A stretch of 64,000 nucleotides of DNA, from positions 1 through 64,000 of the IMG/VR virus record IMGVR_UViG_3300037010_003311, one strand, 5' to 3'. Position 1 is the first letter of the stretch, and each line of letters starts with the position of its first letter. A program made the translations under genes and the position numbers. Positions 1,774-64,000 of this stretch are shown here, in pieces. The notes under the pieces were generated by a model. It did not search any database, was not told where the DNA came from, and was given only the letters and a program-made list of their open reading frames with translations.

Positions 1774-2448
1774 ATGACACAATCAAATGAAATTAAAAAC
1801 GAGAACAACACAATTACTCCAAAGTATAAACTTGGAGCAGCAAAAGAGTTTAACGGAAAAACTCTTTTTAGAATTATCGCTCTTAGATCTTTCAGCAATG
1901 TAATTGCTGGAGATATTGGCGGCTGGATTGAAAGCGAAGCCAATTTATCCCATGACGGAAACGCATGGGTATTTGACGAAGCCATGGTATATGGTAATGC
2001 CAAAGTATTTGGCAATGCCGAATTATGGGGTAATGCCGAAGTATTCGGCAATGCTCGCGTATACAACTACGCGCGCATTGCCGATAATGCCATGGTATGG
2101 GACAATACCATGGTATATGATTATGCCTTGGTATTGGATGATGCCAAGGTATATGAAAATTCCCATGTATTTGGGAATGGTGTAGTGAGAGGTGACACCT
2201 CAATATTTGGTGACGCTATAGTCACCAAAGCGGCAGTGTCGCTTCCAACCGACGAACATATGATTGTCATCACTGACAATCATATATCGATTGGGGGGAA
2301 AAATTTCCCAATCGAGAATTGGAACGAAACTGATAAAGAAATAGCCAAAATAAATTTTGGCGCTGACAATTGGTGGAAAAAATGGAAACCAATTGCCTTT
2401 GGGATAATTGAGGCTTATCCCAACGGGGCCTTCGTAAAAAGAGGTTAA
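1774..2448 (+). CDS. capped hexapeptide-repeat (beta-helix) protein, dispersed copy
   Basis: N-cap KYKLG..TLFR..ALR.F..GDIGGWIE..NLSH.G.AW, V[YF][GD]NAx repeats, C-cap ITDN.I.IG...WWK.WKPI. Confidence 0.9.
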   Translation: MTQSNEIKNENNTITPKYKLGAAKEFNGKTLFRIIALRSFSNVIAGDIGGWIESEANLSHDGNAWVFDEAMVYGNAKVFGNAELWGNAEVFGNARVYNYARIADNAMVWDNTMVYDYALVLDDAKVYENSHVFGNGVVRGDTSIFGDAIVTKAAVSLPTDEHMIVITDNHISIGGKNFPIENWNETDKEIAKINFGADNWWKKWKPIAFGIIEAYPNGAFVKRG

Positions 2449-30940: not shown

Positions 30941-31411
30941 ATGGCTAAGAAAAAGAACGAACAAGAAGAACTCCTATGGTATGATTATAATGTTGCGGAC
31001 GAGAAGCAGTTTAAAATGGTAGTTAAAGCCATACAAAAGGTTTGTCGGGGGTCTTTGGAATATGATCAGTGGCAAACTAGAACTAAAGCTGGTTCTAAAA
31101 CCTGCCCAATATGCGACGAGTTTTATACGTATATGAAATCAGAAACTCATCATTATCCCAAAACAATGTATTCAGTCTGCGAGGAAGTAATAGAAAAACA
31201 TATATACGAAAACACATTAGATGAACAATCAGGATTTGGTATTTGCCAAGAGATTATGAATAAACATATACTTGGTAATGTTGAATACATAGTGCTTTGT
31301 AAAAGCTGTCATGAGAAATTTCATGCCGACCATCCGGAAGTTTGTACTAAAGTTAGTGAAGTATATAAACAACAGTTGCTGGATAAGCAGAATAAGCTAG
31401 ATAATAAATAA
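30941..31411 (+). CDS. HNH-like zinc-binding protein
   Basis: CPIC, ETHH, LCKSCHEKFH. Confidence 0.6.
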   Translation: MAKKKNEQEELLWYDYNVADEKQFKMVVKAIQKVCRGSLEYDQWQTRTKAGSKTCPICDEFYTYMKSETHHYPKTMYSVCEEVIEKHIYENTLDEQSGFGICQEIMNKHILGNVEYIVLCKSCHEKFHADHPEVCTKVSEVYKQQLLDKQNKLDNK

Positions 31412-31427
31412 AGGGTAAAGATAAAGA

Positions 31428-32453
31428 ATGACAACAGTTAAAATTAAAAATAAAGATAAAACAGTTGGGCCAAAATATAAACTAGGTGAGCCAAAAGATT
31501 TTAACGGAAGAACTCTGTTTAGAGTTATAGCATTAAGAGCTTTTAGCAATGTAAATATTGGCGATATCGGTGGCTGGATTGAAACCGAAGATAACTTGTC
31601 CCATAGTGGTGACGCTTGGGTAGGCGATGAGGCAAGAGTCTATGACGAGGCAAGAGTATATGATAATGCTCATGTATTTAATAATGCCTGCGTGTATGGT
31701 AAGGCTCAAGTTAGGGGCGATGCCAGAATATATGACCAAGCTACTATATTTGGTAAAGCTAATGTATTTGGTAAAGCCCAAATATTTGAGGATGCAAATA
31801 TATACGATGAGGCTAAGGTTTATAATAATGCAAGAGTGCGTGGTAATACCAAAGTATATAATAATGCTAAAATACATGATCGAGCTAGAGTAAGTGATAA
31901 TGCTAGAGTAAGTGATAACGCAATAATAGATGGATCGGCTCAGGTATATGGTAATGTTAGGATATATGGGAATTCTAGAATTTTTGGTAATGCCAAAGTA
32001 TATGATGATGCCTGCGTGTATGGTAAGGCTCAAGTTAGAGGTGAGGCCAGAATATATGACGAAGCTACTATATTTGGTAAAGCTAAGGTATTTGGTAAAG
32101 CTCAAATATATGAGGAAGCAAATATATATGATGATGCTCAAGTGTACGGTAATACTAAAATATCTGGTTATGGTGAAGTATATGATAATGCTCAGGTATT
32201 TGGTAATGGATTGATTAAGGGTAATACCCAAGTATATGGTGACGCCATAGTTACCAAAGCCGTTAATACAATATCCACTTCTAGATATGATATTACGATT
32301 ACCGACAATTATCTAAAAATCGGGAGTGAAAATCACCCAATCGATGATTGGGAAGCTTTTACAGACGAGCAGATAGCTGACATGGATACCGGAGCACTAG
32401 AGTGGTGGAACATTTGGAAGCCAAGCATATTCAGCATGATAAAAAAGTATTAA
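31428..32453 (+). CDS. capped hexapeptide-repeat protein
   Basis: N-cap, long repeat tract with an internal block duplication, C-cap. Confidence 0.9.
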   Translation: MTTVKIKNKDKTVGPKYKLGEPKDFNGRTLFRVIALRAFSNVNIGDIGGWIETEDNLSHSGDAWVGDEARVYDEARVYDNAHVFNNACVYGKAQVRGDARIYDQATIFGKANVFGKAQIFEDANIYDEAKVYNNARVRGNTKVYNNAKIHDRARVSDNARVSDNAIIDGSAQVYGNVRIYGNSRIFGNAKVYDDACVYGKAQVRGEARIYDEATIFGKAKVFGKAQIYEEANIYDDAQVYGNTKISGYGEVYDNAQVFGNGLIKGNTQVYGDAIVTKAVNTISTSRYDITITDNYLKIGSENHPIDDWEAFTDEQIADMDTGALEWWNIWKPSIFSMIKKY

Positions 32454-32555
32454 ATTATAATAATTTTAATTTATAATGTGACTGAGGGTTGAGGTTTAGA
32501 ATTCCATATTATATAACGATTCGCGAAGCTGAATCGGTAAAGAGAAAGGTAACTT

Positions 32556-32855
32556 ATGAAATACGTAATACTTGATTTTAATAACGGTAAAGTCTTCCCA
32601 GATAATCATTTATATCAAGAAGCTTTAAACTTTTGTAATTCTGATATGCAAACTATAACGATTGGGTCCGAATTATTTTTTCATCAGTTTAGACTGTTGG
32701 TTAAAACCAAAGTTATCAATAATGAAGATTATCAGTTTATTTTCAAAACTGATAATCACGAAATGTTATTAAATGTTAGCTCCGATGGTGCGTTATGTGA
32801 ATGGTATCCATCGGATTATAATGTATCATTTAATACAATTATCAAAATTATATAA
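32556..32855 (+). CDS. hypothetical protein inside the repeat-gene cluster
   Basis: ORF with RBS. Confidence 0.6.
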   Translation: MKYVILDFNNGKVFPDNHLYQEALNFCNSDMQTITIGSELFFHQFRLLVKTKVINNEDYQFIFKTDNHEMLLNVSSDGALCEWYPSDYNVSFNTIIKII

Positions 32856-32951
32856 CTGGAATATTATGACATTACAAAAAGAAATTAAAATCCTTTAGAA
32901 GATGTTCAATTACTGTATAAATAAAAAATAACTCAAAAAGAAGGAAATATT

Positions 32952-33785
32952 ATGACACAATCAAATGAAATTAAAAACGAGAATAAAGCAATTGCACCAA
33001 AATATAAACTTGGTGAAGCAAAAACGTTTAACGGGAAAACTCTTTTTAGAGTTGTAGCATTGAGAACATTTAGCAATGTTGCTGCTGGTGATATCGGTGG
33101 CTGGATTGAAATCGAAGCTAACTTGTCCCATAGTGGAGATGCTTGGGTTTATGACGAAGCTATGGTATATGATGGGGCAAGAGTTAGTGGTAATGCTATG
33201 GTATTGGATCATGCTATTGTATTTGGTAACTCGATGATATACGATAATGCCATGGTATTGGATCATGCTATTGTATTTGGTAACTCGATGGTATTTGATA
33301 ATGCCATGGTATTTGATAATGCTATGGTATTTGATTATGCTATGGTATTTGATAATGCCATGGTATTTGATTATGCTATGGCATATTGTAAAGCTAGGGT
33401 ATATGGTGATGCTCGGGTATTTGGTAATGCTGAAGTATATGGTGATGCTCGGGTATTTGGTAATGCTGAAGTATATGGTGATGCGGTTGTATATGGTAAC
33501 TCGATGGTATACTCCGGAGCTAAAGTATATGGTGGTGCTCAGGTGTATGGCGAAACTGAGATTTCAGATAGTGCTCAAGTATGGGGTAATGCAAAAATTT
33601 TTGGTAAAGCAAAAATTTCTGGGAACGCAAGAGTTTTTGATAAAGCCGAAGTTTTTGGTAATATTTGGGTTTATGGTGATACATTAGTTCATGATAACAC
33701 AAAAATTTATGATAATGCTAAAATTTCTTGTAAAACAATCATTTGGGGCAAAACACTTATTACTGAAACATACAAGGATAAGTAA
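32952..33785 (+). CDS. hexapeptide-repeat protein without C-cap
   Basis: N-cap and repeats; divergent end. Confidence 0.9.
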   Translation: MTQSNEIKNENKAIAPKYKLGEAKTFNGKTLFRVVALRTFSNVAAGDIGGWIEIEANLSHSGDAWVYDEAMVYDGARVSGNAMVLDHAIVFGNSMIYDNAMVLDHAIVFGNSMVFDNAMVFDNAMVFDYAMVFDNAMVFDYAMAYCKARVYGDARVFGNAEVYGDARVFGNAEVYGDAVVYGNSMVYSGAKVYGGAQVYGETEISDSAQVWGNAKIFGKAKISGNARVFDKAEVFGNIWVYGDTLVHDNTKIYDNAKISCKTIIWGKTLITETYKDK

Positions 33786-34489
33786 TGATAGAATTAAAAT
33801 ATAAACTAGGTGAATCAAAAGAGTTCGAAGGGAGAACTCTTTTTAGGGTCGTAGCACTGAGATCATTTAGCAATGTAACAGCCGGTGATATCGGTGGCTG
33901 GATTGAAATCGAAGATAATTTGTCACATAGTGGAGATGCTTGGGTCTATCGTGATGCTAAGGTATATGGGAATGCCCGAGTATTTGGTGATGCTCATATA
34001 AGTAATAATGCTCAGGTATTTGGTAATGCTCGAATAAATGATGATGCCTGGATAGGCAATAATGCTCAGATATATGGTAATGCTTGCGTGCATGGTAATG
34101 CTCAGGTATATGATAATGCTGAAGTATATGATAATGCCGAAGTATTTGATAATGCCGAAGTATTTGATAATGCCTGCGTATATGGTAATGTTCAGGTATT
34201 TGATAATGCTGAAGTATATGGTGATGCCCGGGTGGTTGATAATGGTGTAGTTGATAGTAATGCTCAAGTATGTGGCAATGCTTTGGTAACTAAAGCAGTT
34301 AATACAATAACCACCAATAAATATATTATCACGATTGCTGACAATTACATGAAAATCGGTTGTCGGAATCACCCAATCGATGATTGGGAAGCTTTTACAG
34401 ACGAGCAGATATCTGACATGGATACCGGAGCATTAGCTTGGTGGAAAGTTTGGAAGCCAATTATATTTACCATAATAAATGCTTATTAA
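33785..34489 (+). CDS. capped hexapeptide-repeat protein
   Basis: N-cap, repeats, C-cap ending WKPIIFTIINAY. Confidence 0.9.
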   Translation: MIELKYKLGESKEFEGRTLFRVVALRSFSNVTAGDIGGWIEIEDNLSHSGDAWVYRDAKVYGNARVFGDAHISNNAQVFGNARINDDAWIGNNAQIYGNACVHGNAQVYDNAEVYDNAEVFDNAEVFDNACVYGNVQVFDNAEVYGDARVVDNGVVDSNAQVCGNALVTKAVNTITTNKYIITIADNYMKIGCRNHPIDDWEAFTDEQISDMDTGALAWWKVWKPIIFTIINAY

Positions 34490-34516
34490 ATAAGCTAACT
34501 ACAAAAAGGAAAGATT

Positions 34517-35167
34517 ATGATACAATCAACTGAAATTAAAAACGAGAATAAAGCAATTGAACCAAAATATAAACTTGGAGGCACAAAAACATTTAACGGG
34601 AGAACTCTTTTTAGAGTTATAGCATTAAGATCTTTTAGCGATGTGATGGCTGGTGATATCGGTGGTTGGGTAGAAACTGAAGATAACCTAGCACAAGATG
34701 GTGACGCTTGGGTCTATGATGATGCTATGGTATATGATGGGGCAAGAGTTAGTGGTAATGCTGTGGTATTGGATCATGCTATTGTATTTGGTAACTCGAT
34801 GATATACGATAATGCCATGGTATTTGATAATGCCGTGGTATATGGTAATGCCATGGTATATGATTATGCTATGGCATATTGTAAAGCTAGGGTATATGGC
34901 AATGCTCGGGTATTTGGTAAGGGATTGGTTAAAGGTAAAGCCCAAGTATATGGTAACGCCATAGCTACCAAAGCAGTTAATACGATGCATACTGATGCTT
35001 ACAATATTACCATTATTGATAATTATATAACTATTGGGTTCGAAAATCACCCAATCGCTGATTGGGAAGCATTTACCGACGAGCAGATAGCTGACATGGA
35101 TACTGGAGCCCTAGCGTGGTGGAAAGTTTGGAAGCCAATTATATTTGCTATAATAAATGCTTATTAA
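34517..35167 (+). CDS. capped hexapeptide-repeat protein
   Basis: N-cap, repeats, C-cap. Confidence 0.9.
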   Translation: MIQSTEIKNENKAIEPKYKLGGTKTFNGRTLFRVIALRSFSDVMAGDIGGWVETEDNLAQDGDAWVYDDAMVYDGARVSGNAVVLDHAIVFGNSMIYDNAMVFDNAVVYGNAMVYDYAMAYCKARVYGNARVFGKGLVKGKAQVYGNAIATKAVNTMHTDAYNITIIDNYITIGFENHPIADWEAFTDEQIADMDTGALAWWKVWKPIIFAIINAY

Positions 35168-35194
35168 CTAAGCTAACTGCAAAAAGGAAATAAT

Positions 35195-35974
35195 ATGACA
35201 AAAGTAGATAATAAAGCAATTATACCAAAATATAAACTTGGTGTAGCAAAAGAGTTCGATGGGAGAACTCTTTTTAGAGTTGTAGCGTTAAGAGATTTCG
35301 GTGACATAAAAGCCGGTGATATCGGTGGCTGGATCGAAACTGAAACTAACTTATCTCATAGTGGTAACGCTTGGGTCTATGATGATGCCAAAGTACAAGA
35401 TAATGCAAGAGTGAAGGATAATGCAGTAATTTGGGATAATGTGGTTGTATATGATAACGCAATGGTATATGGTAATGCAGTAATTTGGGATAATGTGGTT
35501 GTATATGATAACGCAATGGTATATGGTAATGCAGTAATTTGGGATAATGTGGTTGTATATGATAACGCAATGGTATATGGTAATGCCCGGATATTGGATA
35601 ATGCCAAAGTATATGATAACGCAATGGTATATGATAATGCAAGAGTTAGTGATACCGCCCAGGTTTATGGTAATGCTAAAATATATGGTATGGTTGAAGC
35701 ATACGATAATGTTCGTATATTTGGTGACACATGGGTTACCGGTAATACTTAAGTATATGGTAACGCCATAGCTACCAAAGCAGTTAATACGATGCATACT
35801 GATGCTTACAATATTACCATTATTGATAATTATATAACGATTGGATTCGAAAATCACCCAATCGTTGATTGGGAAACATTTACAGATGATGAAATATCTA
35901 AAATGGATACCGGAGCACTAGCGTGGTGGAAAGTTTGGAAGCCAATTATATTTGCTATAATAAATGCGTATTAA
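35195..35974 (+). pseudogene. capped hexapeptide-repeat gene with a single in-frame TAA (35750-35752)
   Basis: GGT AAT ACT TAA GTA TAT here versus GGT AAT ACT CAA GTA TAT in the paralog at 36427-36444; frame continues to an intact C-cap. Confidence 0.85.
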
Positions 35975-35991
35975 ATAAATAAGGATAAAAA

Positions 35992-37584
35992 ATGGTAGGA
36001 AAAAAATATAAACTTGGAGAATCAAAAAAGTCCCAAGGAAGAACTCTTTTTAGAGTTGTAGCGTTAAGAGATTTCGGTGACGTAAAAGCAGGTGATATCG
36101 GTGGTTGGATAGAAACTGAAACTAACTTATCTCATAGTGGTGATTCTTGGGTCTATGATGAGGCCAGAGTTAGTGGTGATACTTGGGTCTATGGTAATGC
36201 CAAAATATCCAATAATGCACAGATATTCGGTAATGCCTGCATATATGGTAATACCAAAGTAGGGGATGAAGCTCAGGTATTTGGTAATGCCATCGTATAT
36301 GGTAATGCTTTGATATATGGTTCTACTCAGGTATTTGGTAATGTTGAAATATATGAGAATGCCCAAGTATTTGGTATGGCTAAAGCATACGATAATGTTC
36401 GTATATTTGGTTATGCATGGATTACCGGTAATACTCAAGTATATGGTAACACCATAGTTACCAAAGCGGTTAATACAATATACACTGGTGAGTATGATAT
36501 TATCATTACTGACAACTATATAAAGATTTGGTGGGAAAATCACCCAATCGACGTTTGGGAAGCATTTACCGACGAGCAGATAGCTGACATGGATACCGGA
36601 GCGCTAGCGTGGTGGAAAGTTTGGAAGCCAATTATATTTGATATAATACAAAAAGGAAATAATATGACATCACAAAAAGAAATTAAAAACTTCTGGGAAA
36701 AGATGCTTAATTACCGTATAAATAAAAATAACTCCAAAAAAGAAGGAAATAATATGATGCAATCAAATGAAATTAAAAACGAGAATAAAGCAATTGTACC
36801 AAAATATAAACTTGGTGAAGCAAAAACCTTTAATGTAAGAACTCTTTTTAGAGTTGAAGCTCTGAGATCATTTGGCAATGTGTCTACCGGTGATATCGGT
36901 GGCTGGATTGAAAACGAAGATAATTTGTCTCATAGTGGAGATGCTTGGGTCTATGACGAAGCTATGGTATATGGTAATGCTCGAGTGAGTAATGACGCAA
37001 TAGTGAGGGATAATGCCTGCATATATGGTAATACCAAAGTAGGGGATGAAGCTCAGGTATTTGGTAATGCCATCGTATATGGTAATGCTTGTATAAGTGA
37101 TAATGCTCAGGTATATGGTAATGCTCGTATAAGTGATGACGCCCAAGTATACGATACAGCTCATGTATTCGATAACGCATATATAATCGATAATGCTTGG
37201 ATAGGTAATAATGCAAGAGTATGTGGCAATGCGCGTATAACTGATGATTCGCGAGTATACGATAACGCATTGATTAGTGGTCATTCCTTGATTTCTGATA
37301 GGGCTTTGATATATGGCAATGCCCAGGTATTTGATAATGGCTTGGTTAAGGGTAATACCCATGTATGGGGTAACGCCGAAGTTACCAAAGCAGTTATTAC
37401 GATACATACCGATGCTTACAATATTACCATTACTGATAATTATATAACTATTGGGTTCGAAAATCACCCAATCGCTGATTGGGAAACATTTACTGATGAT
37501 GAAATATCCAAAATGGATGCAGGAGCGTTAGATTGGTGGCGAGTCTGGAAGCCAATTATATTTGCTATAATAAATGCTTATTAA
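35992..37584 (+). CDS. in-frame fusion of two capped hexapeptide-repeat genes
   Basis: two complete N-cap/repeat/C-cap units; former intergenic DNA with its RBS is read through; internal start near 36754. Confidence 0.85.
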   Translation: MVGKKYKLGESKKSQGRTLFRVVALRDFGDVKAGDIGGWIETETNLSHSGDSWVYDEARVSGDTWVYGNAKISNNAQIFGNACIYGNTKVGDEAQVFGNAIVYGNALIYGSTQVFGNVEIYENAQVFGMAKAYDNVRIFGYAWITGNTQVYGNTIVTKAVNTIYTGEYDIIITDNYIKIWWENHPIDVWEAFTDEQIADMDTGALAWWKVWKPIIFDIIQKGNNMTSQKEIKNFWEKMLNYRINKNNSKKEGNNMMQSNEIKNENKAIVPKYKLGEAKTFNVRTLFRVEALRSFGNVSTGDIGGWIENEDNLSHSGDAWVYDEAMVYGNARVSNDAIVRDNACIYGNTKVGDEAQVFGNAIVYGNACISDNAQVYGNARISDDAQVYDTAHVFDNAYIIDNAWIGNNARVCGNARITDDSRVYDNALISGHSLISDRALIYGNAQVFDNGLVKGNTHVWGNAEVTKAVITIHTDAYNITITDNYITIGFENHPIADWETFTDDEISKMDAGALDWWRVWKPIIFAIINAY

Positions 37585-37610
37585 ATAGCTAACCGCAAAA
37601 AGGAAATAAT

Positions 37611-38360
37611 ATGATGCAATCAAATGAAATTAAAAACGAGAATAAAGCAATGGTAACTCCAAAATATAAGCTTGGTGAGTCAAAAGAGGTCTTAGGGAGA
37701 ACTCTTTTTAGAGTTGTAGCGTTAAGAGATTTCGGTGACGTAAAAGCAGGTGATATCGGTGGTTGGGTAGAAACTGAAGATAACCTAGCACAAGATGGTG
37801 GAGCTTGGGTAGAAACTGAAGATAACCTAGCACAAGATGGTGGAGCTTGGGTCTATGATGAAGCTATGGTATATGATGGGGCAAGAGTCTATGATGACGC
37901 AAGAATATTTGATAAAGCGATTGTATGTGGTAACTCGCTGGTATATGGTAACTCGCTGGTGCGCGAGTATGCTATGGTATATGATAATGCTGAGGTAGCT
38001 GGTAAGGCCGGGATAGCTGGTAATGCTAAAGTATATGATAACGCGTTAGTTAGTGGCTATTCCTTGGTCTCTGGTAATGCTTCGATATATGGTGCAGCCC
38101 GGATATTTGATAATGGGGTAGTTGATAGTATCGCCCAAGTATGCGGTAACGCAGTAGTTACCAAAGCAGTTAATACCATACACACTGATAAATATATTAT
38201 CACGATTACTGATAATTATCTAAAAATTGGATGTCAGAATCACCCGATCGACGTTTGGGAAGCATTTACCGACGAGCAGATAGCTGACATGGAGGTAGGA
38301 GCATTAGATTGGTGGCGAGTCTGGAAGCCAATTATATTTACCATAATAAATGCTTATTAA
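37611..38360 (+). CDS. capped hexapeptide-repeat protein
   Basis: has a 42-bp tandem duplication encoding WVETEDNLAQDGGA twice. Confidence 0.9.
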   Translation: MMQSNEIKNENKAMVTPKYKLGESKEVLGRTLFRVVALRDFGDVKAGDIGGWVETEDNLAQDGGAWVETEDNLAQDGGAWVYDEAMVYDGARVYDDARIFDKAIVCGNSLVYGNSLVREYAMVYDNAEVAGKAGIAGNAKVYDNALVSGYSLVSGNASIYGAARIFDNGVVDSIAQVCGNAVVTKAVNTIHTDKYIITITDNYLKIGCQNHPIDVWEAFTDEQIADMEVGALDWWRVWKPIIFTIINAY

Positions 38361-38387
38361 CTAAGCTAACTATGAAAAGGAAAGATT

Positions 38388-38963
38388 ATGACAAAAGTAG
38401 ATAATAAAGAAATTACACCAAAATATAAACTTGGTGAAGCAAAAGAGTTCGATGGGAGAACTCTTTTTAGGGTCGTAGCGTTAAGAGATTTCGGTGACGT
38501 AAAAGCCGGTGATATCGGTGGTTGGGTAGAAAATGAAACTAACTTGTTTCATAGTGGTGACGCTTGGGTCTATGATGAGGCTAGAGTTAGTGGTGATGCT
38601 TGGGTCTATGATGAGGCTAGAGTTAGTGGTGATGCGCGGGCATATGGTAATGCCTGCATATATGGTAATACCAAAGTAGGGGATGAAGCTCAGGTATTTG
38701 GTAATGCCATCGTATATGGTAATGCTTGTATAAGTGATAATGCTCAGGTATATGGTAATGCTCGTATAGGTAATAATGCGCGGGTATATGGTAATGCTTG
38801 CGTGCATGGTAATGCTCAGGTATATGGTAATGCTGAAGTATATGGTAATGCTGAAGTATATGGTAATGCTGAAGTATATGGTAATGCTGAAGTATATGGC
38901 AGCGCAAAAATATCTAACAATATTTGGATATTTGATAATGCCCGTATATATGGTAAGGCCTAA
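38388..38963 (+). CDS. truncated hexapeptide-repeat protein (decaying copy)
   Basis: TAA at a Q position of the repeat; degenerate repeat sequence continues to about 39045; no C-cap. Confidence 0.75.
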   Translation: MTKVDNKEITPKYKLGEAKEFDGRTLFRVVALRDFGDVKAGDIGGWVENETNLFHSGDAWVYDEARVSGDAWVYDEARVSGDARAYGNACIYGNTKVGDEAQVFGNAIVYGNACISDNAQVYGNARIGNNARVYGNACVHGNAQVYGNAEVYGNAEVYGNAEVYGNAEVYGSAKISNNIWIFDNARIYGKA

Positions 38964-39077
38964 ATATTTGATAACGCTCAAGCATACGATAATGCATTGA
39001 TTAGGGGGTTAGTCCACGATCTCTGGTAATGATTTGATATACGCGGATTAAATAGCTAAATACAAAAAGGAAAGATT

Positions 39078-39857
39078 ATGACAAAAGCAGATAATAAAGG
39101 TGTGACACCAAAATATAAACTTGGTGAAGCAAAAACCTTTAATGGAAGAACTCTTTTTAGAGTTGTAGCATTGAGAACATTTAGCAATGTTGCTGCTGGT
39201 GATATCGGTGGCTGGATTGAAATCGAAGCTAACTTGTCCCATAGTGGAGATGCTTGGGTCTATGATGAAGCTATGGTATATGGTAAGGCCAGAGTTGGTA
39301 ATGACGCAATAGTGAGGGATAATGCCAGAATGAGTGATAATGCTCATGTATATGGTAATGCGTTGATAGGTGGTAATGCGGTTGTATATGGTAACGCAAT
39401 AGTATACGCTAGAGCGCAAGTATATGATAATGCACAAATATCTGGTGATACCCATGTGTGCGATAATGCTAAGGTATTTAATAATGCTAAGGTATATGGT
39501 AATGCTCAAATTTCTGGTTATGCTAAGGTATTTAATAATGCTAAGGTATATGGTAATGCCCATATCCATGGTAATGCTAATGTTGGGGATAATGCTAAAG
39601 TATATGGTAATGGTTTGGTTGGCGGATATACTAGGATATATGTTGATACGATAGTTACCAAAGCAGTTAATACCATATTCACTGATAAATATGAGGTTAC
39701 AATTTCTGACAATTATATAAAAATCGATTGCGAGAATCACTCACTATTCGATTGGGAAAATTTTACTGATAATCAGATATCCAAAATGGATACTGGAGCA
39801 TTAGAATGGTGGAAAGTTTGGAAGCCAATTATATTTGCTATAATAAATGCAGATTAA
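39078..39857 (+). CDS. capped hexapeptide-repeat protein
   Basis: N-cap, repeats, C-cap. Confidence 0.9.
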   Translation: MTKADNKGVTPKYKLGEAKTFNGRTLFRVVALRTFSNVAAGDIGGWIEIEANLSHSGDAWVYDEAMVYGKARVGNDAIVRDNARMSDNAHVYGNALIGGNAVVYGNAIVYARAQVYDNAQISGDTHVCDNAKVFNNAKVYGNAQISGYAKVFNNAKVYGNAHIHGNANVGDNAKVYGNGLVGGYTRIYVDTIVTKAVNTIFTDKYEVTISDNYIKIDCENHSLFDWENFTDNQISKMDTGALEWWKVWKPIIFAIINAD

Positions 39858-39912
39858 ATTAGAATAATTTAATCCCGTATAAGAATAACTACGAAAAAAG
39901 AAGGTATTTAAA

Positions 39913-40167
39913 ATGAAAATTAAAGGATTACGAAATAAACAATACTGAACATTTAAATGGTACGGGTAAAAGTAAATATACCCATGTAATGATAAACCGG
40001 TTCAAATATTGAGTACGGATAGAAAAAATAATTTATATCCAGTATTAGCGCACAGTGATGAATTCCAAGAAGAATGTGGCGTAAGGGCATTTACTAAATT
40101 TGGAAAGTTTACTCACGGAATAGATTCGGTATATGATCTAGTAGAGTTGAATACATTAAAACTTTAG
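39913..40167 (+). pseudogene. frameshifted remnant of the MKISM-KKYT family
   Basis: frame from 39985 reads CNDKPVQILSTDRKNNLYPV...FT..G...YDLVE; upstream KYT and MKI are out of frame. Confidence 0.6.
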
Positions 40168-40215: not shown

Positions 40216-40527
40216 ATGCATGTACATGATTGGATAAACGAAAGAATGTATGGGAAATGCCCGGATGAAGAAAAATATGCTGTAGCTTTTTTACATATAA
40301 AGGCTACTACAACAGCAGTAAGTACTTGGGTTATAGAACCCATAATGAAACAACATAAACTTTTTTGTACGTACAAAGGAAGCAAATATAGAGTCACTGG
40401 ATGCAGCCGTATGGGTGATATATGGTTAGTAAAAAATTATAATAAAGATAATGGATACGATCTTAGAGTAGACGTTGAAGAGTGTACGGATTGGTCTGAA
40501 AAATTGGATAAAGAAAAAGGAGAATGA
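40216..40527 (+). CDS. phage hypothetical protein
   Basis: YRVTGCSRMGDIWL..GYDLRV. Confidence 0.7.
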   Translation: MHVHDWINERMYGKCPDEEKYAVAFLHIKATTTAVSTWVIEPIMKQHKLFCTYKGSKYRVTGCSRMGDIWLVKNYNKDNGYDLRVDVEECTDWSEKLDKEKGE

Positions 40528-40528
40528 T

Positions 40529-40882
40529 ATGAAGATATCAATGGATAAAAAATATACATGTTGCGGAGAGCCAATACGTATATTATGTATAGATGGAAAT
40601 GACAGTCTCTATCCGGTCATTGGGCTGAGAGATGATGGAACTATACTTAAATTCAGAGAAGATGGGAAATGTTCGCCAGAGTATAACCTCGTGGAGGTTT
40701 GGGAACCAGTAGTAGAAGAATGGTGCCTATTTACCGATGAAACATTAGTTGGGGCATGGTTGTTGCAATTTCTTGATAATGAAGATGGTCGTTTTTATGC
40801 CCTGGGGGTATCGGATAGTTTTGATAAATGTTATAAATTTACGGGAACCATCCCTAAACACTTAAAAGGAAATTTAAAATGA
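40529..40882 (+). CDS. tandem family 2 member (MKISMDKKYT...LPEHL type)
   Basis: shares RILC.D, NLVEVWEP..EWC.F and CYKF.G with neighbours. Confidence 0.85.
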   Translation: MKISMDKKYTCCGEPIRILCIDGNDSLYPVIGLRDDGTILKFREDGKCSPEYNLVEVWEPVVEEWCLFTDETLVGAWLLQFLDNEDGRFYALGVSDSFDKCYKFTGTIPKHLKGNLK

Positions 40883-41238
40883 AAATAGAAATGGGTAAGA
40901 AATATACGAGTAATGGTGACTCTGTTCGAATATTATGTACCGATAGACCTAACGATAATGGGTACACAGTTGTTGGATTATTTGAAAATGGCATGATAGG
41001 CTATTTTACAGAAGACGGGGAAAGTACAACTACTGATCGTCGTAACTTAGTTGAGGTCTGGGAACCGCAACGTGGCGAGTGGTGCCTATTTACAGATTCA
41101 TCATTTAATGGAGCAATGCTGATGCAATTTCTTGTTTGTACAATTTATGGTAGATTTCATGCGATGGGGTCGTACCGCAGTTTTGATCACTGTTATAAAT
41201 TTGATGGAATACTCCCAGAACACTTAAAAGGAGAATGA
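40879..41238 (+). CDS. tandem family 2 member
   Basis: same motif set. Confidence 0.85.
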   Translation: MKIEMGKKYTSNGDSVRILCTDRPNDNGYTVVGLFENGMIGYFTEDGESTTTDRRNLVEVWEPQRGEWCLFTDSSFNGAMLMQFLVCTIYGRFHAMGSYRSFDHCYKFDGILPEHLKGE

Positions 41239-41239
41239 T

Positions 41240-41956
41240 ATGAAGATATCAATGGATAAAAAGTATACAAGTAATGGGCAAGCAGTAAGAATTTTGTGCA
41301 TAGACCGAAAGAATGATTTGTCAGTCGTAGGAATGCTTACGAATAGTAAAATATGTTATTTTTCGGATAACGGTCATAGTCTCGCCGGAGAATGTTATAA
41401 CTTAGTAGAAGCATGGGAACCGCAACGTGGAGAGTGGTGCCTGTTTTATAATATTCTGCAGCCTCACATCATTTTAGATCAATTTGTAGAAATGACTGAT
41501 CAAGGAGAATTCAAAACTCCCGATAATTTAAGTTGGAAATATTGTTATAAATTTACTGGTATTCTACCAGAACATTTACAAGTGCAGAAAAAATATATAG
41601 AACTAACGGTAGAAATGGATAAAAAATATACGTCTGATGGAAGGCCAGTTCGCATATTATGTAATGATAGACCAAGTGGTGATTCTGTAGTAGGACTTTA
41701 TGAAAATGGCGATTTATGTTATTTTACTGGTAAAGGTTATAGTCTCGCCGGAGAATGTTATAACTTAGTAGAAGCATGGGAACCGCAACGTGGAGAGTGG
41801 TGTTTATTTTGTAATGTTCTGAAACCACACAACACTATTTTAGATCAATTTGTAGAAATGACCGAACTCGGAGAATTCCAAACTCCTGATAATTTAAGTT
41901 GGAAATATTGTTATAAATTTACTGGTATTCTACCAGAACACTTAAAAGGAGAATGA
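41240..41956 (+). CDS. tandem family 2 member with two fused units
   Basis: unit repeated twice, second halves near-identical. Confidence 0.85.
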   Translation: MKISMDKKYTSNGQAVRILCIDRKNDLSVVGMLTNSKICYFSDNGHSLAGECYNLVEAWEPQRGEWCLFYNILQPHIILDQFVEMTDQGEFKTPDNLSWKYCYKFTGILPEHLQVQKKYIELTVEMDKKYTSDGRPVRILCNDRPSGDSVVGLYENGDLCYFTGKGYSLAGECYNLVEAWEPQRGEWCLFCNVLKPHNTILDQFVEMTELGEFQTPDNLSWKYCYKFTGILPEHLKGE

Positions 41957-41957
41957 T

Positions 41958-42314
41958 ATGAAGATATCAATGGATAAAAAGTATACAAGTAATGGACAAG
42001 CAGTAAGAATTTTGTGTATAGATGGGTATAAAGAAGATTACCCAGTCGTCGCGATGTATTTAGATGGTGATATTAGATATTTTACTGAAGATGGAGAAAG
42101 TGCAACTGGTGCTCATCGTAACTTAGTTGAGGTATGGGAACCGCAAGTTGGTGAGTGGTGTTGGTTCTGGGATAGTAATGATCAAAAACATGCATCTTTA
42201 TATGAATTCGTAAAAATGGATGATGTTGGAAAATTTACCTCCACTGCTGGTTGTCATTGGAAACATTGTGCCCAATTTGATGGAACTCTCCCAGAACACT
42301 TAAACGGAGAATGA
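41958..42314 (+). CDS. tandem family 2 member
   Basis: same motif set. Confidence 0.85.
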   Translation: MKISMDKKYTSNGQAVRILCIDGYKEDYPVVAMYLDGDIRYFTEDGESATGAHRNLVEVWEPQVGEWCWFWDSNDQKHASLYEFVKMDDVGKFTSTAGCHWKHCAQFDGTLPEHLNGE

Positions 42315-42315
42315 T

Positions 42316-42834
42316 ATGAAGATATCAATGGGTAAAAAGTATACAAGTAATGGAAAGAACTTACGTGTAGTTTGTATAGATAGAGAAAATACATTTGGGT
42401 ATAAAGTTGTTGGGGTATTTGATGATGGAGATATAAAATGCTTTAGATCAAATGGTGATAGCGCGCTTGACTCAAAATATGACTTACAAGAAGTATGGGA
42501 ACCAACTGAAAACGAGTGGTGTTGGTTCTGGGATTGTAATGATTCACAACATATAATTTTATCTAAATTTAAGGAAAAGAATGCTGATGGAATGTTCGGG
42601 TCGGTCGATGGATATTTCTGGATTTATTGTGCTAAATTTACTGGAGAACTACCAGAACATTTACAAGAGAAGACTATAGATTTTAAAAAAACTTTTGTAG
42701 CGAGGGAAGCCAGATGTCAGGATTGTACATATTTGCTTGAATTAGATGGTGAGGGGTATTGTAATTCGGTTAATGATATAGTTAAGAATATAATCGACTG
42801 TCCTTATGGCCGCAGCGAAATTCATAATTGTTAA
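42316..42834 (+). CDS. tandem family 2 member with Cys-rich C-terminal extension
   Basis: unit plus CxxC...C...C tail. Confidence 0.85.
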   Translation: MKISMGKKYTSNGKNLRVVCIDRENTFGYKVVGVFDDGDIKCFRSNGDSALDSKYDLQEVWEPTENEWCWFWDCNDSQHIILSKFKEKNADGMFGSVDGYFWIYCAKFTGELPEHLQEKTIDFKKTFVAREARCQDCTYLLELDGEGYCNSVNDIVKNIIDCPYGRSEIHNC

Positions 42835-48418: not shown

Positions 48419-48877
48419 ATGGAGAATAATGCAATTAATGATCTATGGTTTCTACCATTAGATTTCATTGAAAAGACCGAAAACGATAAGCGTTTAGTGT
48501 ATAGTGATACTGATTCTGTGGTGGGAAATTCAATTATTATAGTAAATGGTAAACCTATTAAAATTGAAGATTTTTATAATTCTTTACCTAATAACTATAT
48601 TGAAGAAAAAGATCATCACTTTGTAAAAAAAAGTGATGGTTTTGTAACGTTAACCGTTAATGATAATCATGAGCTCATAGATAAAGAAATTATTTATTGT
48701 ATGAAGCATTTAGTAAAAAAAAGATTTTTCCGAATTAAAACTGATACAAATGAAGTAATAATCACAGAGGATCATTCATTGATGGTTAAAAGAAATGGTT
48801 ATTTAATTGGTATAAAAGTTAAAGAACTGATGGAAGGTGATGAAATATATGAAATTTCAGAATCCCCCACTTTGTAG
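48419..48877 (+). CDS. family B DNA polymerase fragment (32-aa N-extein ending YSDTD) fused to split-intein N part
   Basis: YSDTD|SVVGNS block A, ITEDH block B; ORF ends after about 120 intein residues. Confidence 0.88.
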   Translation: MENNAINDLWFLPLDFIEKTENDKRLVYSDTDSVVGNSIIIVNGKPIKIEDFYNSLPNNYIEEKDHHFVKKSDGFVTLTVNDNHELIDKEIIYCMKHLVKKRFFRIKTDTNEVIITEDHSLMVKRNGYLIGIKVKELMEGDEIYEISESPTL

Positions 48878-61699: not shown

Positions 61700-62629
61700 A
61701 TGGTAGAAAAAAAATATAAACTTGGTGAGTCAAAAGGGTTCCAAGGAAGAACTCTTTTTAGAGTTGTAGCAATAGTTGGATTCGCTGATGTAAACATTGG
61801 TGAAATCGGTGGTTGGGTAGAGAAAGAAAATAACCTAGCTCACGATGGTGATGCCTGGATCTATGGTGACGCTATGGTATATGGGGATGCTCGAGTTAGT
61901 GGTGATGCTATAGTATATGGTGATGCCCGAGTTAGTGGTGAGGCCCGAGTATATGGTAAGGCTCACGTTAGTGGTGAGGCTCGCGTTAGTGGTGAGGCTC
62001 ACGTTAGGGATAATGCTGAAGTATATGGTAATGCTCAAGTATACGGTTATGCTATGGTATATGGTAATGCTGAAGCATATCGTTTTGCCAAAGTATATGA
62101 TTATACCGAAGTGTATGATAATGCAGAAGTATATGGTAATGCTGAAGTATATTGTGATGCTCGAGTTAGTGGTAATGCTAAGGTGCATGGTAATGCGATG
62201 GTATATGGTAATACTCGAGTTAGTGGTAATGTTATGATACATGGTAATGCGATGGTATATGGTAATTCTGAGGTATATGATAGAGCTCAAGTATATGGGG
62301 AGGCCCAAGTGTATGATAATGCCAAAGTGTATGGTGATACTTATATATATGATAAAGCCATTATATACGATGATGCTGAAGTGTATGATAATGCTAAAGT
62401 ATATGATAATGCCCAAGTGTATGGTTTTGCTGAAGTATATGATAATGCTAAAGTATATGATAGGGCTCAGGTATCTGGTATTGCTGAAGTATATGGTAGG
62501 GCTCAGGTATCTGGTATTGCTGAAGTATATGATAGGGCTCAGGTATATGGTATGGCTCAGGTATATGGTTGGGCCAAAGTATATAACGATACTCATGTAT
62601 CTGGTTATGATGAAGTCTATAGTGTATGA
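61700..62629 (+). CDS. hexapeptide-repeat protein, second cluster, no C-cap
   Basis: N-cap plus repeats ending NDTHVSGYDEVYSV. Confidence 0.9.
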   Translation: MVEKKYKLGESKGFQGRTLFRVVAIVGFADVNIGEIGGWVEKENNLAHDGDAWIYGDAMVYGDARVSGDAIVYGDARVSGEARVYGKAHVSGEARVSGEAHVRDNAEVYGNAQVYGYAMVYGNAEAYRFAKVYDYTEVYDNAEVYGNAEVYCDARVSGNAKVHGNAMVYGNTRVSGNVMIHGNAMVYGNSEVYDRAQVYGEAQVYDNAKVYGDTYIYDKAIIYDDAEVYDNAKVYDNAQVYGFAEVYDNAKVYDRAQVSGIAEVYGRAQVSGIAEVYDRAQVYGMAQVYGWAKVYNDTHVSGYDEVYSV

Positions 62630-62714
62630 TATCAAAGTAATACCATCATATAAACCAAAGTTGCCAATACCGGACCGAGGACATACTACTTCAGAACTTG
62701 AAGCTAAGTTATGA
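62626..62714 (+). pseudogene. frameshifted and internally deleted copy of 63358-63630
   Basis: shares SYKPKLPI and TTS.LEAK; its ATG is out of frame. Confidence 0.55.
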
Positions 62715-62729
62715 AGATTGAAACGAAAG

Positions 62730-62769
62730 AACTTACCGGATAACCAGGTAAGTTTCCCGGTCGCTAAAA
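62730..62769 (+). repeat. hairpin element B, copy 2
   Basis: AACTTACCGG-ATAAC-CAGGTAAGTT then CCGGTCGCTAAAA. Confidence 0.75.
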
Positions 62770-62827
62770 TGTTACAGATTGAAATTTGATACAATATACT
62801 AGCGGTCGATCATTAAAAGGAATATAA

Positions 62828-63361
62828 ATGGTGGAAAAAAAATATAAACTTGGTGAGTCAGAAGAGTTTCCATCTGGAACTCTTTTTAGAGTTATAGCAT
62901 TAAAAGATTTTAACGATGTAACTGCTGGTGAAATCGGTGGTTGGATCGAAAAAGAAGATAACCTAGCGCAAGATGGTGACGCTTGGGTCTATGGTGACGC
63001 TATGGTATATGGTGATGCTCGAGTTAGTGATGATGCTCAGGTATATGGTAATGCCCGAGTTAGTGGTGAGGCTCGAGTATATGATAAGGCTCACGTTAAG
63101 GATAATGCTGAAGTATATGGTAATGCTCAAGTATATGGTTATGCTATGGTATATGGTAATGCTGAAGCATATCGTTTTGCCAAAGTATATGATTATGCCG
63201 AAGTATATGATTATGCCGAAGTGTATGATAATGCTCAAGTGTATGATTATGCTGAAGTATATGATAATGCTGAAGTATATGGTATGGCTCAGGTATACGG
63301 TTGGGCCAAAGTATATAACGATACTCATGTATCTGGTTATGATGAAGTATATAGTGTATGA
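62828..63361 (+). CDS. hexapeptide-repeat protein, shorter paralog of 61700-62629
   Basis: same C-terminal 25 aa, fewer repeats. Confidence 0.9.
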   Translation: MVEKKYKLGESEEFPSGTLFRVIALKDFNDVTAGEIGGWIEKEDNLAQDGDAWVYGDAMVYGDARVSDDAQVYGNARVSGEARVYDKAHVKDNAEVYGNAQVYGYAMVYGNAEAYRFAKVYDYAEVYDYAEVYDNAQVYDYAEVYDNAEVYGMAQVYGWAKVYNDTHVSGYDEVYSV

Positions 63362-63630
63362 TGACAAAGTATATGCTATCCTATAAACCAAAGTTACCAA
63401 TACAAGAACTCAGCGAAGAAACTTTTAAAAGGGAATACCTAAGCGAGGATATACTTTACGCTAAGTCATATAATATGTGCGGTGAATGTATTTTCTTTGA
63501 ACCGGGTCGTGGGTGTACTACTTCAAAACTTGAAGCTAAGTACGGGAATAGTCGTACACCAGCCTGCGAAGAATTTAAAATAAAAGGAATGAGCAATGAC
63601 AACGAAAGAGCTTACCGGGATATCCGGTAA
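63358..63630 (+). CDS. small Cys-containing hypothetical protein
   Basis: CxxC...C...PAC..F. Confidence 0.55.
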   Translation: MMTKYMLSYKPKLPIQELSEETFKREYLSEDILYAKSYNMCGECIFFEPGRGCTTSKLEAKYGNSRTPACEEFKIKGMSNDNERAYRDIR

Positions 63631-63650
63631 GCTCTCCTGTCGCGAAAAAG
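63607..63650 (+). repeat. hairpin element B, copy 3
   Basis: AGAGCTTACCGG-GATAT-CCGGTAAGCTCT then CCTGTCGCGAAAAAG. Confidence 0.8.
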
Positions 63651-63707
63651 AAGACATAATGAAATTGGATATACTATACTATCGTATGATCATTAAAAGG
63701 AATATAA

Positions 63708-64000
63708 ATGGTAGGAAAAAAATATAAACTTGGGGAGTCAGAAGAGTTCTTAGGAAGAACTATTTTTAGAATTATAGCACTAAGAACATTTAATGATGTA
63801 TCTATCGGAGACATTGGTGGATGGGTCGAAAGTGAAAATAACTTAGATCATAATGGTGGTGCCTGGATTTATGGTAATGCTATGGTATATGGTGATACTC
63901 GAGTTAGTTGTAATGCTATGGTATATGGTAATGCTATGGTATATGATAATGCTCAGGTATATGGTGATGCTCAAGTATACGGGGATGCCCAAGTATATGG
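63708..64000 (+). CDS. hexapeptide-repeat protein, partial (runs off the window)
   Basis: MVGKKYKLGE..TIFRIIALR.F..GDIGGWVE then VYG[DN]A repeats. Confidence 0.88.
   Translation, partial: MVGKKYKLGESEEFLGRTIFRIIALRTFNDVSIGDIGGWVESENNLDHNGGAWIYGNAMVYGDTRVSCNAMVYGNAMVYDNAQVYGDAQVYGDAQVY

What the first reader, a model, noticed from the sequence alone, without database searches (positions are those of the whole stretch)
33040..39260. Identical DNA blocks shared between non-adjacent paralogs: modular shuffling or gene conversion
Seen: an 80-bp block (TAATGCCTGCATATATGG...GGTAATGCTT) is identical at 36231, 37011 and 38648, and extends to about 120 bp between the last two. The N-cap DNA of the 32952 and 39078 genes is identical over about 100 bp. 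The VLDHAIVFGNSMIYDNAMV and DYAMAYCKARVYG blocks are shared by the 32952 and 34517 genes. The HTDAYNIT...GFENHPI C-cap variant is shared by three genes with different N-caps. Inference: caps and repeat cassettes reassort independently by recombination in the 18-nt register, which diversifies the genes without a reverse transcriptase.
Basis: partly seen in the sequence, partly recalled or inferred. Interest (0 to 1): 0.75.

Follow-up and report, generated by a model that had tools for sequence, protein, structure and literature searches.

The report
Patchwork paralog array in a phage
A large T4-like phage from a microbial mat carries ten tandem copies (fourteen in all) of a beta-solenoid gene of unknown function, and these copies have repeatedly copied short stretches of DNA into one another, which is ordinary gene conversion in an unusually clear form and not a dedicated diversity machine.

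Summary
When repeat units are shuffled among genes, the longest match is 48 bp at most. PHI tests and AU tests show recombination, and the N-cap and C-cap trees conflict. Contigs assembled independently from sister samples reproduce two stretches: one spans the 121-bp block in both genes, the other covers U4 and the start of U5.

The genes are YdcK-type left-handed beta-helix proteins. Each has 14-42 hexapeptide units (always exact multiples of 18 nt) and a small C-terminal domain, which in other phages is fused to pentapeptide-repeat proteins.

The best explanation is a lineage-specific tandem expansion evolving by unequal crossing-over and patchy interlocus gene conversion. Related co-occurring phages carry 1 or 3 copies.

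- Recombination without a reverse transcriptase fits, since none is found.
- The tracts ignore module boundaries.
- Sister-sample contigs are 99.9-100% identical over the two stretches they cover, so nothing points to programmed, high-frequency shuffling.

Similar 7-11-copy arrays, two of them rich in shared blocks, occur in unrelated metagenome contigs. Protein function is unknown.

The parts
31428..32453 (+). U1: full-length paralog with N-cap, 35 hexapeptide units and C-cap. It contains an internal 324-nt duplication (31684/32008).
32556..32855 (+). Unrelated 99-aa gene that interrupts the array between U1 and U2. It is 88% identical to a gene that follows a 3-copy array in a co-occurring related phage (L048).
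32952..33785 (+). U2: paralog with N-cap and 35 units but no C-cap. It has leader type MTQSNEIKNENK.
33038..33148 (+). 111-bp exact block in the U2 N-cap, identical to 39149-39259 in U10, which lies 6.1 kb and seven genes away. The leaders upstream differ.
33785..34489 (+). U3: full-length paralog with 19 units. This is the copy that was modelled.
34517..35167 (+). U4: full-length paralog with 14 units. Its N half is like U2 (61-bp block 33199 = 34764) and its C-cap is like those of U5 and U7.
35195..35974 (+). U5: paralog with 22 units, split by an in-frame TAA at 35750-35752 where U6 has Gln in the same motif and U4 has Gln at the aligned position. An ATG at 35792 could give a stand-alone 60-aa C-cap. 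It holds three tandem 54-nt copies (114-bp exact repeat 35419/35473). The 88-bp block 35751-35838 equals 34944-35031 of U4.
   Evidence: the stop is covered without differences by contigs of runs X1 and X2
35992..37584 (+). One 530-aa ORF containing U6 (35992 to about 36651, 17 units), a 30-codon linker ORF and U7 (its own ATG at 36754, 24 units). U6 lacks the last codons and the stop that the other copies have.
   Evidence: the independent contig L040 has the same U7
36229..36310 (+). 82-bp exact block in U6, identical to 38646-38727 in U9. From 36231 it is identical for 80 bp to 37011 in U7.
37011..37131 (+). 121-bp exact block in U7, identical to 38648-38768 in U9. The two sit one repeat unit out of step. 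Both flanks fall to about 55% identity on the same diagonal.
   Evidence: reproduced in the independent contig L040
37611..38360 (+). U8: full-length paralog with 17 units and a 42-nt tandem duplication in the N-cap (37763/37805). The 69-bp block 37698 equals 36040 in U6, and the 52-bp block 37749 equals 34652 in U4.
38388..38963 (+). U9: paralog ended by a stop inside the repeats, with no C-cap. Degenerate repeat units continue in frame after the stop. YGNAEV occurs four times in tandem.
39078..39857 (+). U10: full-length paralog with 22 units. Its N-cap is 97% identical to that of U2, but its leader and C-cap differ.
1774..2448 (+). U0: a dispersed family member 29 kb upstream, with 14 units and a divergent C-cap.
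61700..64000 (+). Second cluster, U11-U13 (61700-62629, 62828-63361, and 63708 onward, which runs past the window end). These have 20-42 units, no C-cap and a common ...YDEVYSV end. They share 36-60-bp exact blocks.

Best explanation
The region is a lineage-specific tandem expansion of one phage accessory gene. There are ten head-to-tail copies at 31.4-39.9 kb and four more elsewhere in the first 64 kb. The phage is a 226.7-kb distant T4-like phage from a microbial mat or sediment community.

Each protein has three parts: a beta-strand N-cap, a YdcK-type left-handed beta-helix of 14-42 hexapeptide units, and usually a roughly 65-aa alpha/beta C-terminal domain.

The array evolves by ordinary homologous recombination between misaligned paralogs, acting in three ways:
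1. In-register slippage or unequal exchange inside a gene changes the number of units. Tandem duplicates of 18, 36, 54 and 324 nt are present.
2. Unequal crossing-over between genes changes copy number and leaves a fusion (U6-U7) and truncated or broken copies (U2, U5, U9).
3. Short non-reciprocal conversion patches of about 40-120 bp overwrite part of one copy with another. This gives blocks of 100% identity in a 70-75% background and makes every gene a patchwork of several donors.

The blocks, the recombination signal and the conflict between the N-cap and C-cap trees are shown. Three things are inferred. First, the agent is the recombination machinery of the phage or its host. Second, the net effect is a co-expressed panel of solenoids that differ mainly at the exposed fifth residue of each hexapeptide and in length. 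Third, this panel is kept by an arms race with host targets or defences. The biochemical function of the proteins is unknown.
For: Genome context: the record is a virus of 226,657 bases with T4-type topoisomerase II, ligase and rIIB genes.

Protein family:
- PF18836 scores 43-97 bits against a cut-off of 30 in all nine copies tested.
- A family profile matches YdcK structures 2F9C/2PIG at E 1e-37.
- The AlphaFold model has pLDDT 96.4 and shows a beta cap, a solenoid and a C-terminal helical domain. Foldseek's top PDB hit is YdcK.

Recombination:
- Exact blocks stand against 70-75% background identity.
- The unit-shuffle null reaches 48 bp at most, against 121 bp observed.
- Identity steps sharply on both sides of the tracts.
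- No synonymous differences occur inside the tracts.
- PHI p<=0.0005.
- AU tests reject the other module's clades at p 0.0003-0.005 in four of five tests.
- The painting shows a patchwork of donors.

Repeat structure: repeat regions are exact multiples of 18 nt, all matches are in register, and within-gene spacings are 18, 36, 54, 108 and 324 nt.

Copy number: related phages from the same mats carry 1 copy (L045) or 3 copies (L048).

Assembly: independent contigs confirm 36700-39235 and 34368-35512.

Generality: unrelated metagenome contigs hold arrays of 7-11 copies. Two are rich in shared blocks: L078 has a 158-bp block 3.3 kb apart and 11 blocks of 40 bp or more, and L064 has 9 such blocks. 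L062 and L073 each have one.

Variability: the exposed position 5 of the hexapeptide has 3.4 bits of entropy, against 1.0-1.2 bits at core positions 4 and 6.
Against: - No recombinase was found in the record. RecA, Rad51 and T4 UvsX searches were empty and AAA_24 gave only a weak hit. The record is about 81% complete, so the agent is not identified.
- The direction and timing of the conversions cannot be set without close relatives, and none was available.
- The junctions 33000-34367 and 35513-36699 rest on one short-read assembly. Logan contigs break at every block of 31 bp or more and cannot phase them.
- The adaptive value of the mosaicism is not shown. Conversion homogenises as well as diversifies.
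Confidence: 0.8

Rival explanations
1. This is a programmed cassette-shuffling system. The array would be a diversity generator comparable to pilin or VlsE antigenic variation, in which caps and repeat cassettes are reassorted at high frequency to make new proteins during infection cycles.
For: - Each gene is a patchwork of several donors.
- Truncated copies without a C-cap (U2, U9) could act as donors.
- Variation is concentrated at the exposed residue of the hexapeptide.
- Large arrays recur in unrelated contigs, two of them rich in shared blocks.
- Contigs in the same samples carry family sequences and junctions that are absent from this genome.
Against: - There is no expression site versus silent-copy layout. 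Every copy has its own AAAGGAAA-type ribosome-binding site and ATG.
- Contigs from two other samples, covering about 3.7 kb of the array, are 99.9-100% identical to it, with no rearrangement.
- Tracts do not respect module borders.
- No reverse transcriptase and no inverted repeats were found.
- The odd junctions come from k=31 contigs with short sides and low depth, and partly from a diverged relative in run X4.
Confidence: 0.07
2. The mosaic is an assembly artefact. Short-read assembly of a mixed phage population would have joined pieces of different paralogs or strains across shared repeats.
For: - The record is a metagenome assembly.
- Identical blocks of 80-121 bp approach read length.
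- Other family variants co-occur in the same samples.
- Logan contigs break at each block.
Against: - An independent assembly from another sample is collinear over 2536 bp, including the 121-bp block in both U7 and U9 and the U7-U8-U9-U10 order. A second covers the end of U3, all of U4 and the start of U5 exactly.
- Wrong phasing at a shared block would swap flanks but would not create the block. Its presence in two or three different contexts is seen in the unique flanks at 100% identity in runs X1-X3.
- The U4/U5/U7 C-cap versus N-cap conflict holds under either phasing of the 88-bp block.
Confidence: 0.08
3. The identical blocks are kept identical by selection on the DNA or RNA itself, for example an embedded regulatory or structured element, and not by recent transfer.
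For: The blocks are perfectly conserved, including at synonymous sites.
Against: - Each block is shared by only 2-3 of the 14 copies.
- Different blocks lie in different parts of the gene: leader, N-cap, repeats and C-cap.
- The same cassette sits at different unit positions in different genes.
- No promoter or plus-strand terminator signal stands out.
Confidence: 0.03

Closest known systems
Interlocus (ectopic) gene conversion and unequal crossing-over in tandem multigene families, i.e. concerted or birth-and-death evolution (general knowledge)
   Same: It shares tandem paralogs, tracts of identity far above background, tree conflict along the gene, variation in copy number and repeat number, and fusion and truncated copies.
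   Different: It occurs in the accessory region of a lytic T4-like phage, and the genes are made of 18-nt coding repeats. Misaligned exchange can therefore shift a cassette by whole repeat units.
Genomic accordions and variable multigene families of large DNA viruses, such as poxvirus K3L amplification and ASFV MGF360/505 (my own knowledge, not tested here)
   Same: Both are lineage-specific tandem amplifications of a viral accessory gene whose copy number differs between related viruses. Here the numbers are 1, 3 and 10 copies.
   Different: No link to a host defence, and no rapid expansion under selection, is shown here. The copies are old and diverged (70-75% identical), not fresh duplicates.
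Diversity-generating retroelements of phages (the Bordetella phage BPP-1 Mtd type)
   Same: Both give phage-encoded variation of exposed residues on a stable scaffold.
   Different: There is no reverse transcriptase in the record and no template/variable repeat pair. The differences are patches copied between paralogs.
Cassette gene conversion for antigenic variation (Neisseria pilE/pilS, Borrelia vlsE)
   Same: Both build mosaics by segmental, non-reciprocal copying from related copies nearby.
   Different: There is no single expression site with silent cassettes, and no sign of high-frequency change between samples.
YdcK (PDB 2F9C, 2PIG; Pfam PF18836), an uncharacterised enterobacterial left-handed beta-helix protein
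   Same: The N-cap plus the hexapeptide solenoid are homologous (profile E 1e-37; Foldseek top hit).
   Different: The score of 85 bits is far below the NCBIfam YdcK equivalog cut-off of 350. The phage proteins carry a different C-terminal domain and a variable number of units. Neither protein has a known function.

Membership tests
YdcK-type beta-solenoid proteins (Pfam PF18836) | Score above Pfam's gathering cut-off for the YdcK solenoid repeat | tested here: met
   All nine copies tested score 42.9-97.3 bits against a cut-off of 30.
YdcK-type beta-solenoid proteins (Pfam PF18836) | Homology to, and the fold of, the solved YdcK structures | tested here: met
   The profile matches 2F9C at E 1e-37 over positions 13-179. 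The model has pLDDT 96.4, and 2PIG and 2F9C are the top Foldseek hits.
YdcK family, NCBIfam NF040481 (equivalog) | Whole-protein score above the curated equivalog cut-off | tested here: not met
   The score is 85.4 bits against a cut-off of 350. The protein is a relative, not an equivalog.
Tandem family evolving by interlocus gene conversion | Identity tracts longer than divergence and repeat composition allow | tested here: met
   121 bp observed against a shuffle maximum of 48 bp. Seven pairs share a 40-mer or longer against 0.03 expected. No synonymous differences occur in the tracts.
Tandem family evolving by interlocus gene conversion | Statistical recombination signal and tree conflict along the gene | tested here: met
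   PHI p<=0.0005. AU p 0.0003-0.005 in four of five tests; the fifth gave p 0.13.
Tandem family evolving by interlocus gene conversion | Patches flanked on both sides by diverged sequence, as opposed to single crossovers | tested here: met
   Both the U7/U9 and the U2/U10 tracts have diverged flanks on both sides.
Diversity-generating retroelement | A reverse transcriptase gene | tested here: not met
   PF00078 has no match in the 226.7-kb record, while the control genomes gave matches. The record is about 81% complete.
Diversity-generating retroelement | A template/variable repeat pair that differs at adenines | not tested
   The shared blocks are identical, and no single template repeat was seen.
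Shufflon or invertible-segment system | Inverted repeats flanking the segments | tested here: not met
   No inverted repeat pairs of 20 nt or more occur in 31300-40000, and all copies are on the + strand.
Cassette antigenic-variation system | One expressed locus plus silent donor cassettes | tested here: not met
   Every copy has a ribosome-binding site and an ATG.
Cassette antigenic-variation system | Frequent variants within and between populations | tested here: inconclusive
   Sister-sample contigs are 99.9-100% identical. However, k=31 contigs show extra junctions and variants of unclear origin.
Genomic accordion | Copy number differs between close relatives | tested here: met
   Co-occurring related phages have 1 copy (L045) and 3 copies (L048), against 10 here. 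The 99-aa neighbouring gene is 88% identical.
Genomic accordion | Expansion in response to a defined selective pressure | not testable with these tools
   This needs an isolate and its host.

The most novel reading that the evidence does not exclude
YdcK-like solenoid genes may form a recurrent, phage-wide repertoire family. Independent lineages would amplify them into arrays of 7-14 co-expressed copies and use gene conversion between copies to make new combinations of exposed residues on a fixed beta-helix scaffold. The C-terminal domain, shared with phage pentapeptide-repeat proteins, would be the common effector or anchoring part. This would be a combinatorial binder repertoire aimed at variable host targets or defences, functionally comparable to repeat-protein immune receptors but encoded by a virus.
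Probability: 0.12. Interest if true: 0.8.

Novelty: new member of a known kind. Interest (0 to 1): 0.42.

Why it matters
The array is a very clean natural example of how a virus reshapes a repeat-protein family by recombination alone. Copy number, repeat number and sequence patches all change while the 18-nt coding register is kept perfectly.

The same family forms large arrays in unrelated phage-like contigs, two of them rich in shared blocks, and its C-terminal domain is combined with two different solenoid types (hexapeptide and pentapeptide). These proteins therefore probably matter in phage-host conflict, yet no member has a known function. That makes the family a reasonable target for experiments. 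The recombination itself is ordinary.

Tried and rejected
**Searches for close relatives**
- Megablast of the array against 50,697 phage records gave no match.
- IMG/VR and metagenome scans gave only distant relatives, at most about 60% amino-acid identity.
- As a result, conversion events could not be polarised or dated.

**Reads**
- Only Logan k=31 contigs were available. They break at every shared block, so they confirm unique segments and the U5 stop but cannot phase junctions.
- Several loose ends turned out to be other paralogs of the same genome. Others are absent from it.

**Recombinases**
- RecA, Rad51 and T4 UvsX searches found nothing, and AAA_24 gave only a weak sub-threshold hit.

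**Function**
- PADLOC gave no hit for the proteins scanned (U3, the C-cap and one copy of the 118-aa family). NCBIfam gave none for the C-cap or the neighbouring families.
- Four literature searches on phage solenoid proteins, YdcK and phage, and gene conversion in phage paralog arrays found nothing specific.
- A homotrimer prediction gave no answer and is not used as evidence.

**Other checks**
- The promoter scan showed no enrichment, and the terminator-like sites found are not plus-strand intergenic terminators.
- The long antisense ORFs across the array are a by-product of the repeat codons. I did not follow them.

Full report
**Setting**

The window is the first 64 kb of a 226,657-bp virus record, estimated about 81% complete. 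The record is JGI contig Ga0373635_0000018 of sample 3300037010. Four public runs from microbial-mat and sediment metagenomes hold the region.

GC content is about 32%, and every ORF of 150 aa or more outside the repeat arrays lies on the + strand. Topoisomerase II subunits, an ATP-dependent ligase, rIIB and homing endonucleases mark it as a distant T4-like phage. Its topoisomerase large subunit is only about 34% identical to the nearest known phages.

**The genes**

Fourteen family members lie in the first 64.3 kb.
- U1-U10 form a head-to-tail array at 31428-39857. It is interrupted once, by an unrelated 99-aa gene.
- U0 lies at 1774.
- U11-U13 lie at 61700-64334.

All nine copies tested pass Pfam's cut-off for the YdcK beta-solenoid repeat. 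A profile of the family matches the solved YdcK structures 2F9C and 2PIG at E 1e-37. The score is far below NCBI's YdcK equivalog cut-off.

An AlphaFold model of U3 (pLDDT 96.4) shows a beta-strand N-cap, a regular solenoid and a small C-terminal domain that ends in a long helix. YdcK is the best PDB match, and uncharacterised phage proteins are the best viral matches.

After the N-cap, every gene has an exact whole number of 18-nt units: 14, 35, 35, 19, 14, 22, 17, 24, 17, about 21, 22, 42, 20 and 23. The consensus unit is Y-G/D-N-A-x-V. Positions 4 and 6 are nearly fixed, and position 5 is highly variable at 3.4 bits.

- 121 bp: 37011 = 38648
- 82 bp: 36229 = 38646
- 80 bp: 36231 = 37011
- 111 bp: 33038 = 39149
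- 88 bp: 34944 = 35751
- 61 bp: 33199 = 34764

Smaller blocks include 69 bp shared by U6 and U8 and 52 bp shared by U4 and U8.

Paralogs are otherwise 70-75% identical. Along the diagonal of each block, identity steps from 18/18 to about 10/18 per unit on both sides.

Two nulls show that this is not a side effect of a biased repeat.
- Shuffling the 325 units among genes never gave a between-gene match longer than 48 bp in 500 trials. It gave 0.03 gene pairs sharing a 40-mer, against 7 observed.
- Elsewhere, codons for identical residues are the same codon only 69% of the time. Inside the tracts all 17-40 degenerate codons are identical.

**Recombination**

PHI tests give p<=0.0005 for the N-cap, for the C-cap and for the two joined.

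The N-cap tree groups {U5, U6, U8} and {U3, U7, U10}. The C-cap tree groups {U4, {U5, U7}} with 98-99% support. In AU tests, each partition rejected the other's clades at p 0.0003-0.005 in four of five comparisons. The clade U7+U10 was not rejected by the C-cap data (p 0.13).

A painting of each gene by its nearest paralog in 36-nt windows shows patchworks. U7 is an example:
- Its leader is like those of U8 and U2.
- Its N-cap is like that of U10.
- Its repeat block is shared with U6 and U9.
- Its C-cap is like those of U4 and U5.

**Is the arrangement real?**

Logan contigs (k=31) break at each shared block. They confirm only the unique segments, at 100% identity in three runs, and the in-frame stop of U5.

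Two JGI contigs from other samples of the same study give stronger support.
- L040 (2536 bp) is collinear with 36700-39235, with three mismatches and no gap. It carries the 121-bp block in both U7 and U9 with the same flanks.
- L042 (1145 bp) equals 34368-35512 exactly.

Misphasing at a block could swap flanks but could not create a block that sits in two or three contexts. The stretches 33000-34367 and 35513-36699 remain supported by one assembly only.

**What kind of process**

- No reverse transcriptase was found.
- No inverted repeats were found.
- All copies are on one strand, and each has its own ribosome-binding site and ATG.
- All 38 between-gene and 22 within-gene matches of 24 nt or more are in the 18-nt register. 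Cassettes sit at unit offsets spread evenly over the three faces of the helix (14/13/11). Within-gene duplicates are spaced 18, 36, 54, 108 and 324 nt apart.
- The tracts cross the borders of leader, N-cap, repeats and C-cap.

This is the signature of homology-driven unequal exchange and short conversion patches. It is not exchange of discrete modules. The array also carries the usual debris of such a process:
- U6 has lost its last codons and its stop, and reads through a 30-codon linker into U7.
- U5 has a nonsense codon where U6 has Gln in the same motif and U4 has Gln at the aligned position.
- U2 and U9 lack the C-cap.

The recombinase was not found in the record, so that step is inferred.

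**Tempo**

The two sister-sample contigs are 99.9-100% identical to the array. Over the roughly 3.7 kb they cover, it is stable on the scale of these samples.

The samples also hold family sequences and junctions that are not in this genome. At least some come from related phages. A co-occurring relative has three copies upstream of the same 99-aa gene (88% identical), and another relative has one copy. Copy number therefore differs between relatives, which fits birth-and-death evolution.

**Wider picture**

Most phages with this family have one copy. Several unrelated contigs have arrays of 7-11 copies.
- L078 has 11 copies, a 158-bp exact block between copies 3.3 kb apart, and eleven blocks of 40 bp or more.
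- L064 has nine such blocks.
- L062 and L073 have one each.

The C-terminal domain also occurs alone, and it is fused to pentapeptide-repeat proteins in other phages. No library gives it, or the family, a function, and four literature searches found nothing specific.

**Verdict**

The mechanism is ordinary interlocus gene conversion and unequal crossing-over in a lineage-specific tandem expansion of a phage solenoid gene.

The recurrence of such arrays, and the unknown function of a widespread phage family, are the parts worth following up.

Noticed in passing
window 40475-42834: A second tandem family lies directly downstream of the array: about seven copies of a roughly 118-aa protein (MKISMDKKYTSNG...LPEHLKGE), one of them a two-domain ORF at 41240-41956. 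It has no Pfam hit on record in the precomputed annotation, and one copy scanned against NCBIfam and PADLOC gave no hit. It has its own 53-64-bp exact blocks between copies. Five copies sit next to the single YdcK-like gene in a related phage (L045).
   Followed up: partly
window 35992-37584: U6 has lost its last four codons and its stop. It reads through the next ribosome-binding site and a 30-codon small ORF into U7, giving a 530-aa two-solenoid ORF. The small ORF (MTSQKEIKNFWEK...) resembles the sequence at 32867, upstream of U2, which hints at an older multi-gene segmental duplication.
   Followed up: partly
window 35750-35974: The in-frame TAA of U5 lies one base before the 88-bp block shared with U4, and contigs of two runs cover it without differences. 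An ATG at 35792 could yield a free 60-aa C-cap. Stand-alone proteins of 61-76 aa that score as look-alikes of this domain form clusters in the ESM Atlas.
   Followed up: partly
L030-L036 (IMG/VR loci), e.g. L032:9323-10210: In other phages the same C-terminal domain (...IGC..H....WW.F.D..I..MD..AL.WWKVWKPIL...) follows pentapeptide repeats (ADLSYANLRY...) instead of hexapeptide repeats. One small domain is therefore combined with two different solenoid folds.
   Followed up: partly
L078:400-8253 and L064:1-6531 (metagenome contigs Ga0209702_10000737 and Ga0209187_1007996): These are independent tandem arrays of 11 and 10 family copies, without this C-cap. They have many shared exact blocks, up to 158 bp between copies 3.3 kb apart.
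   Followed up: partly
window 37763-37846: U8 carries a 42-nt tandem duplication inside the N-cap, so WVETEDNLAQDGGA occurs twice. The duplicated motif is the variant otherwise seen in U4.
   Followed up: no
window 31533-32231, 33923-34372, 35351-35857, 36868-37467, 38481-38981, 39048-39740 (minus strand): Long antisense ORFs of 150-230 aa run through every paralog. They look like a by-product of the repeat's codon make-up, which gives no stop codons in the reverse frames, and not like genes.
   Followed up: no
window about 23460-24050 and 48419-50004: A gene with a GmrSD_N domain (typical of modification-dependent restriction enzymes) lies about 8 kb upstream of the array. Two adjacent ORFs with weak intein-splicing hits follow a GTP cyclohydrolase I gene. 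Both observations come from precomputed Pfam hits.
   Followed up: no
window 33000-38999, runs X1-X4: Contigs in the same samples carry family sequences absent from this genome, for example the continuation after 35479 seen in three runs. They also carry junctions that join pieces resembling different reference paralogs, for example 33148 to 37875 in X4. These may be other mosaics in related phages, but the evidence is weak: k=31 contigs, short sides and low depth.
   Followed up: partly
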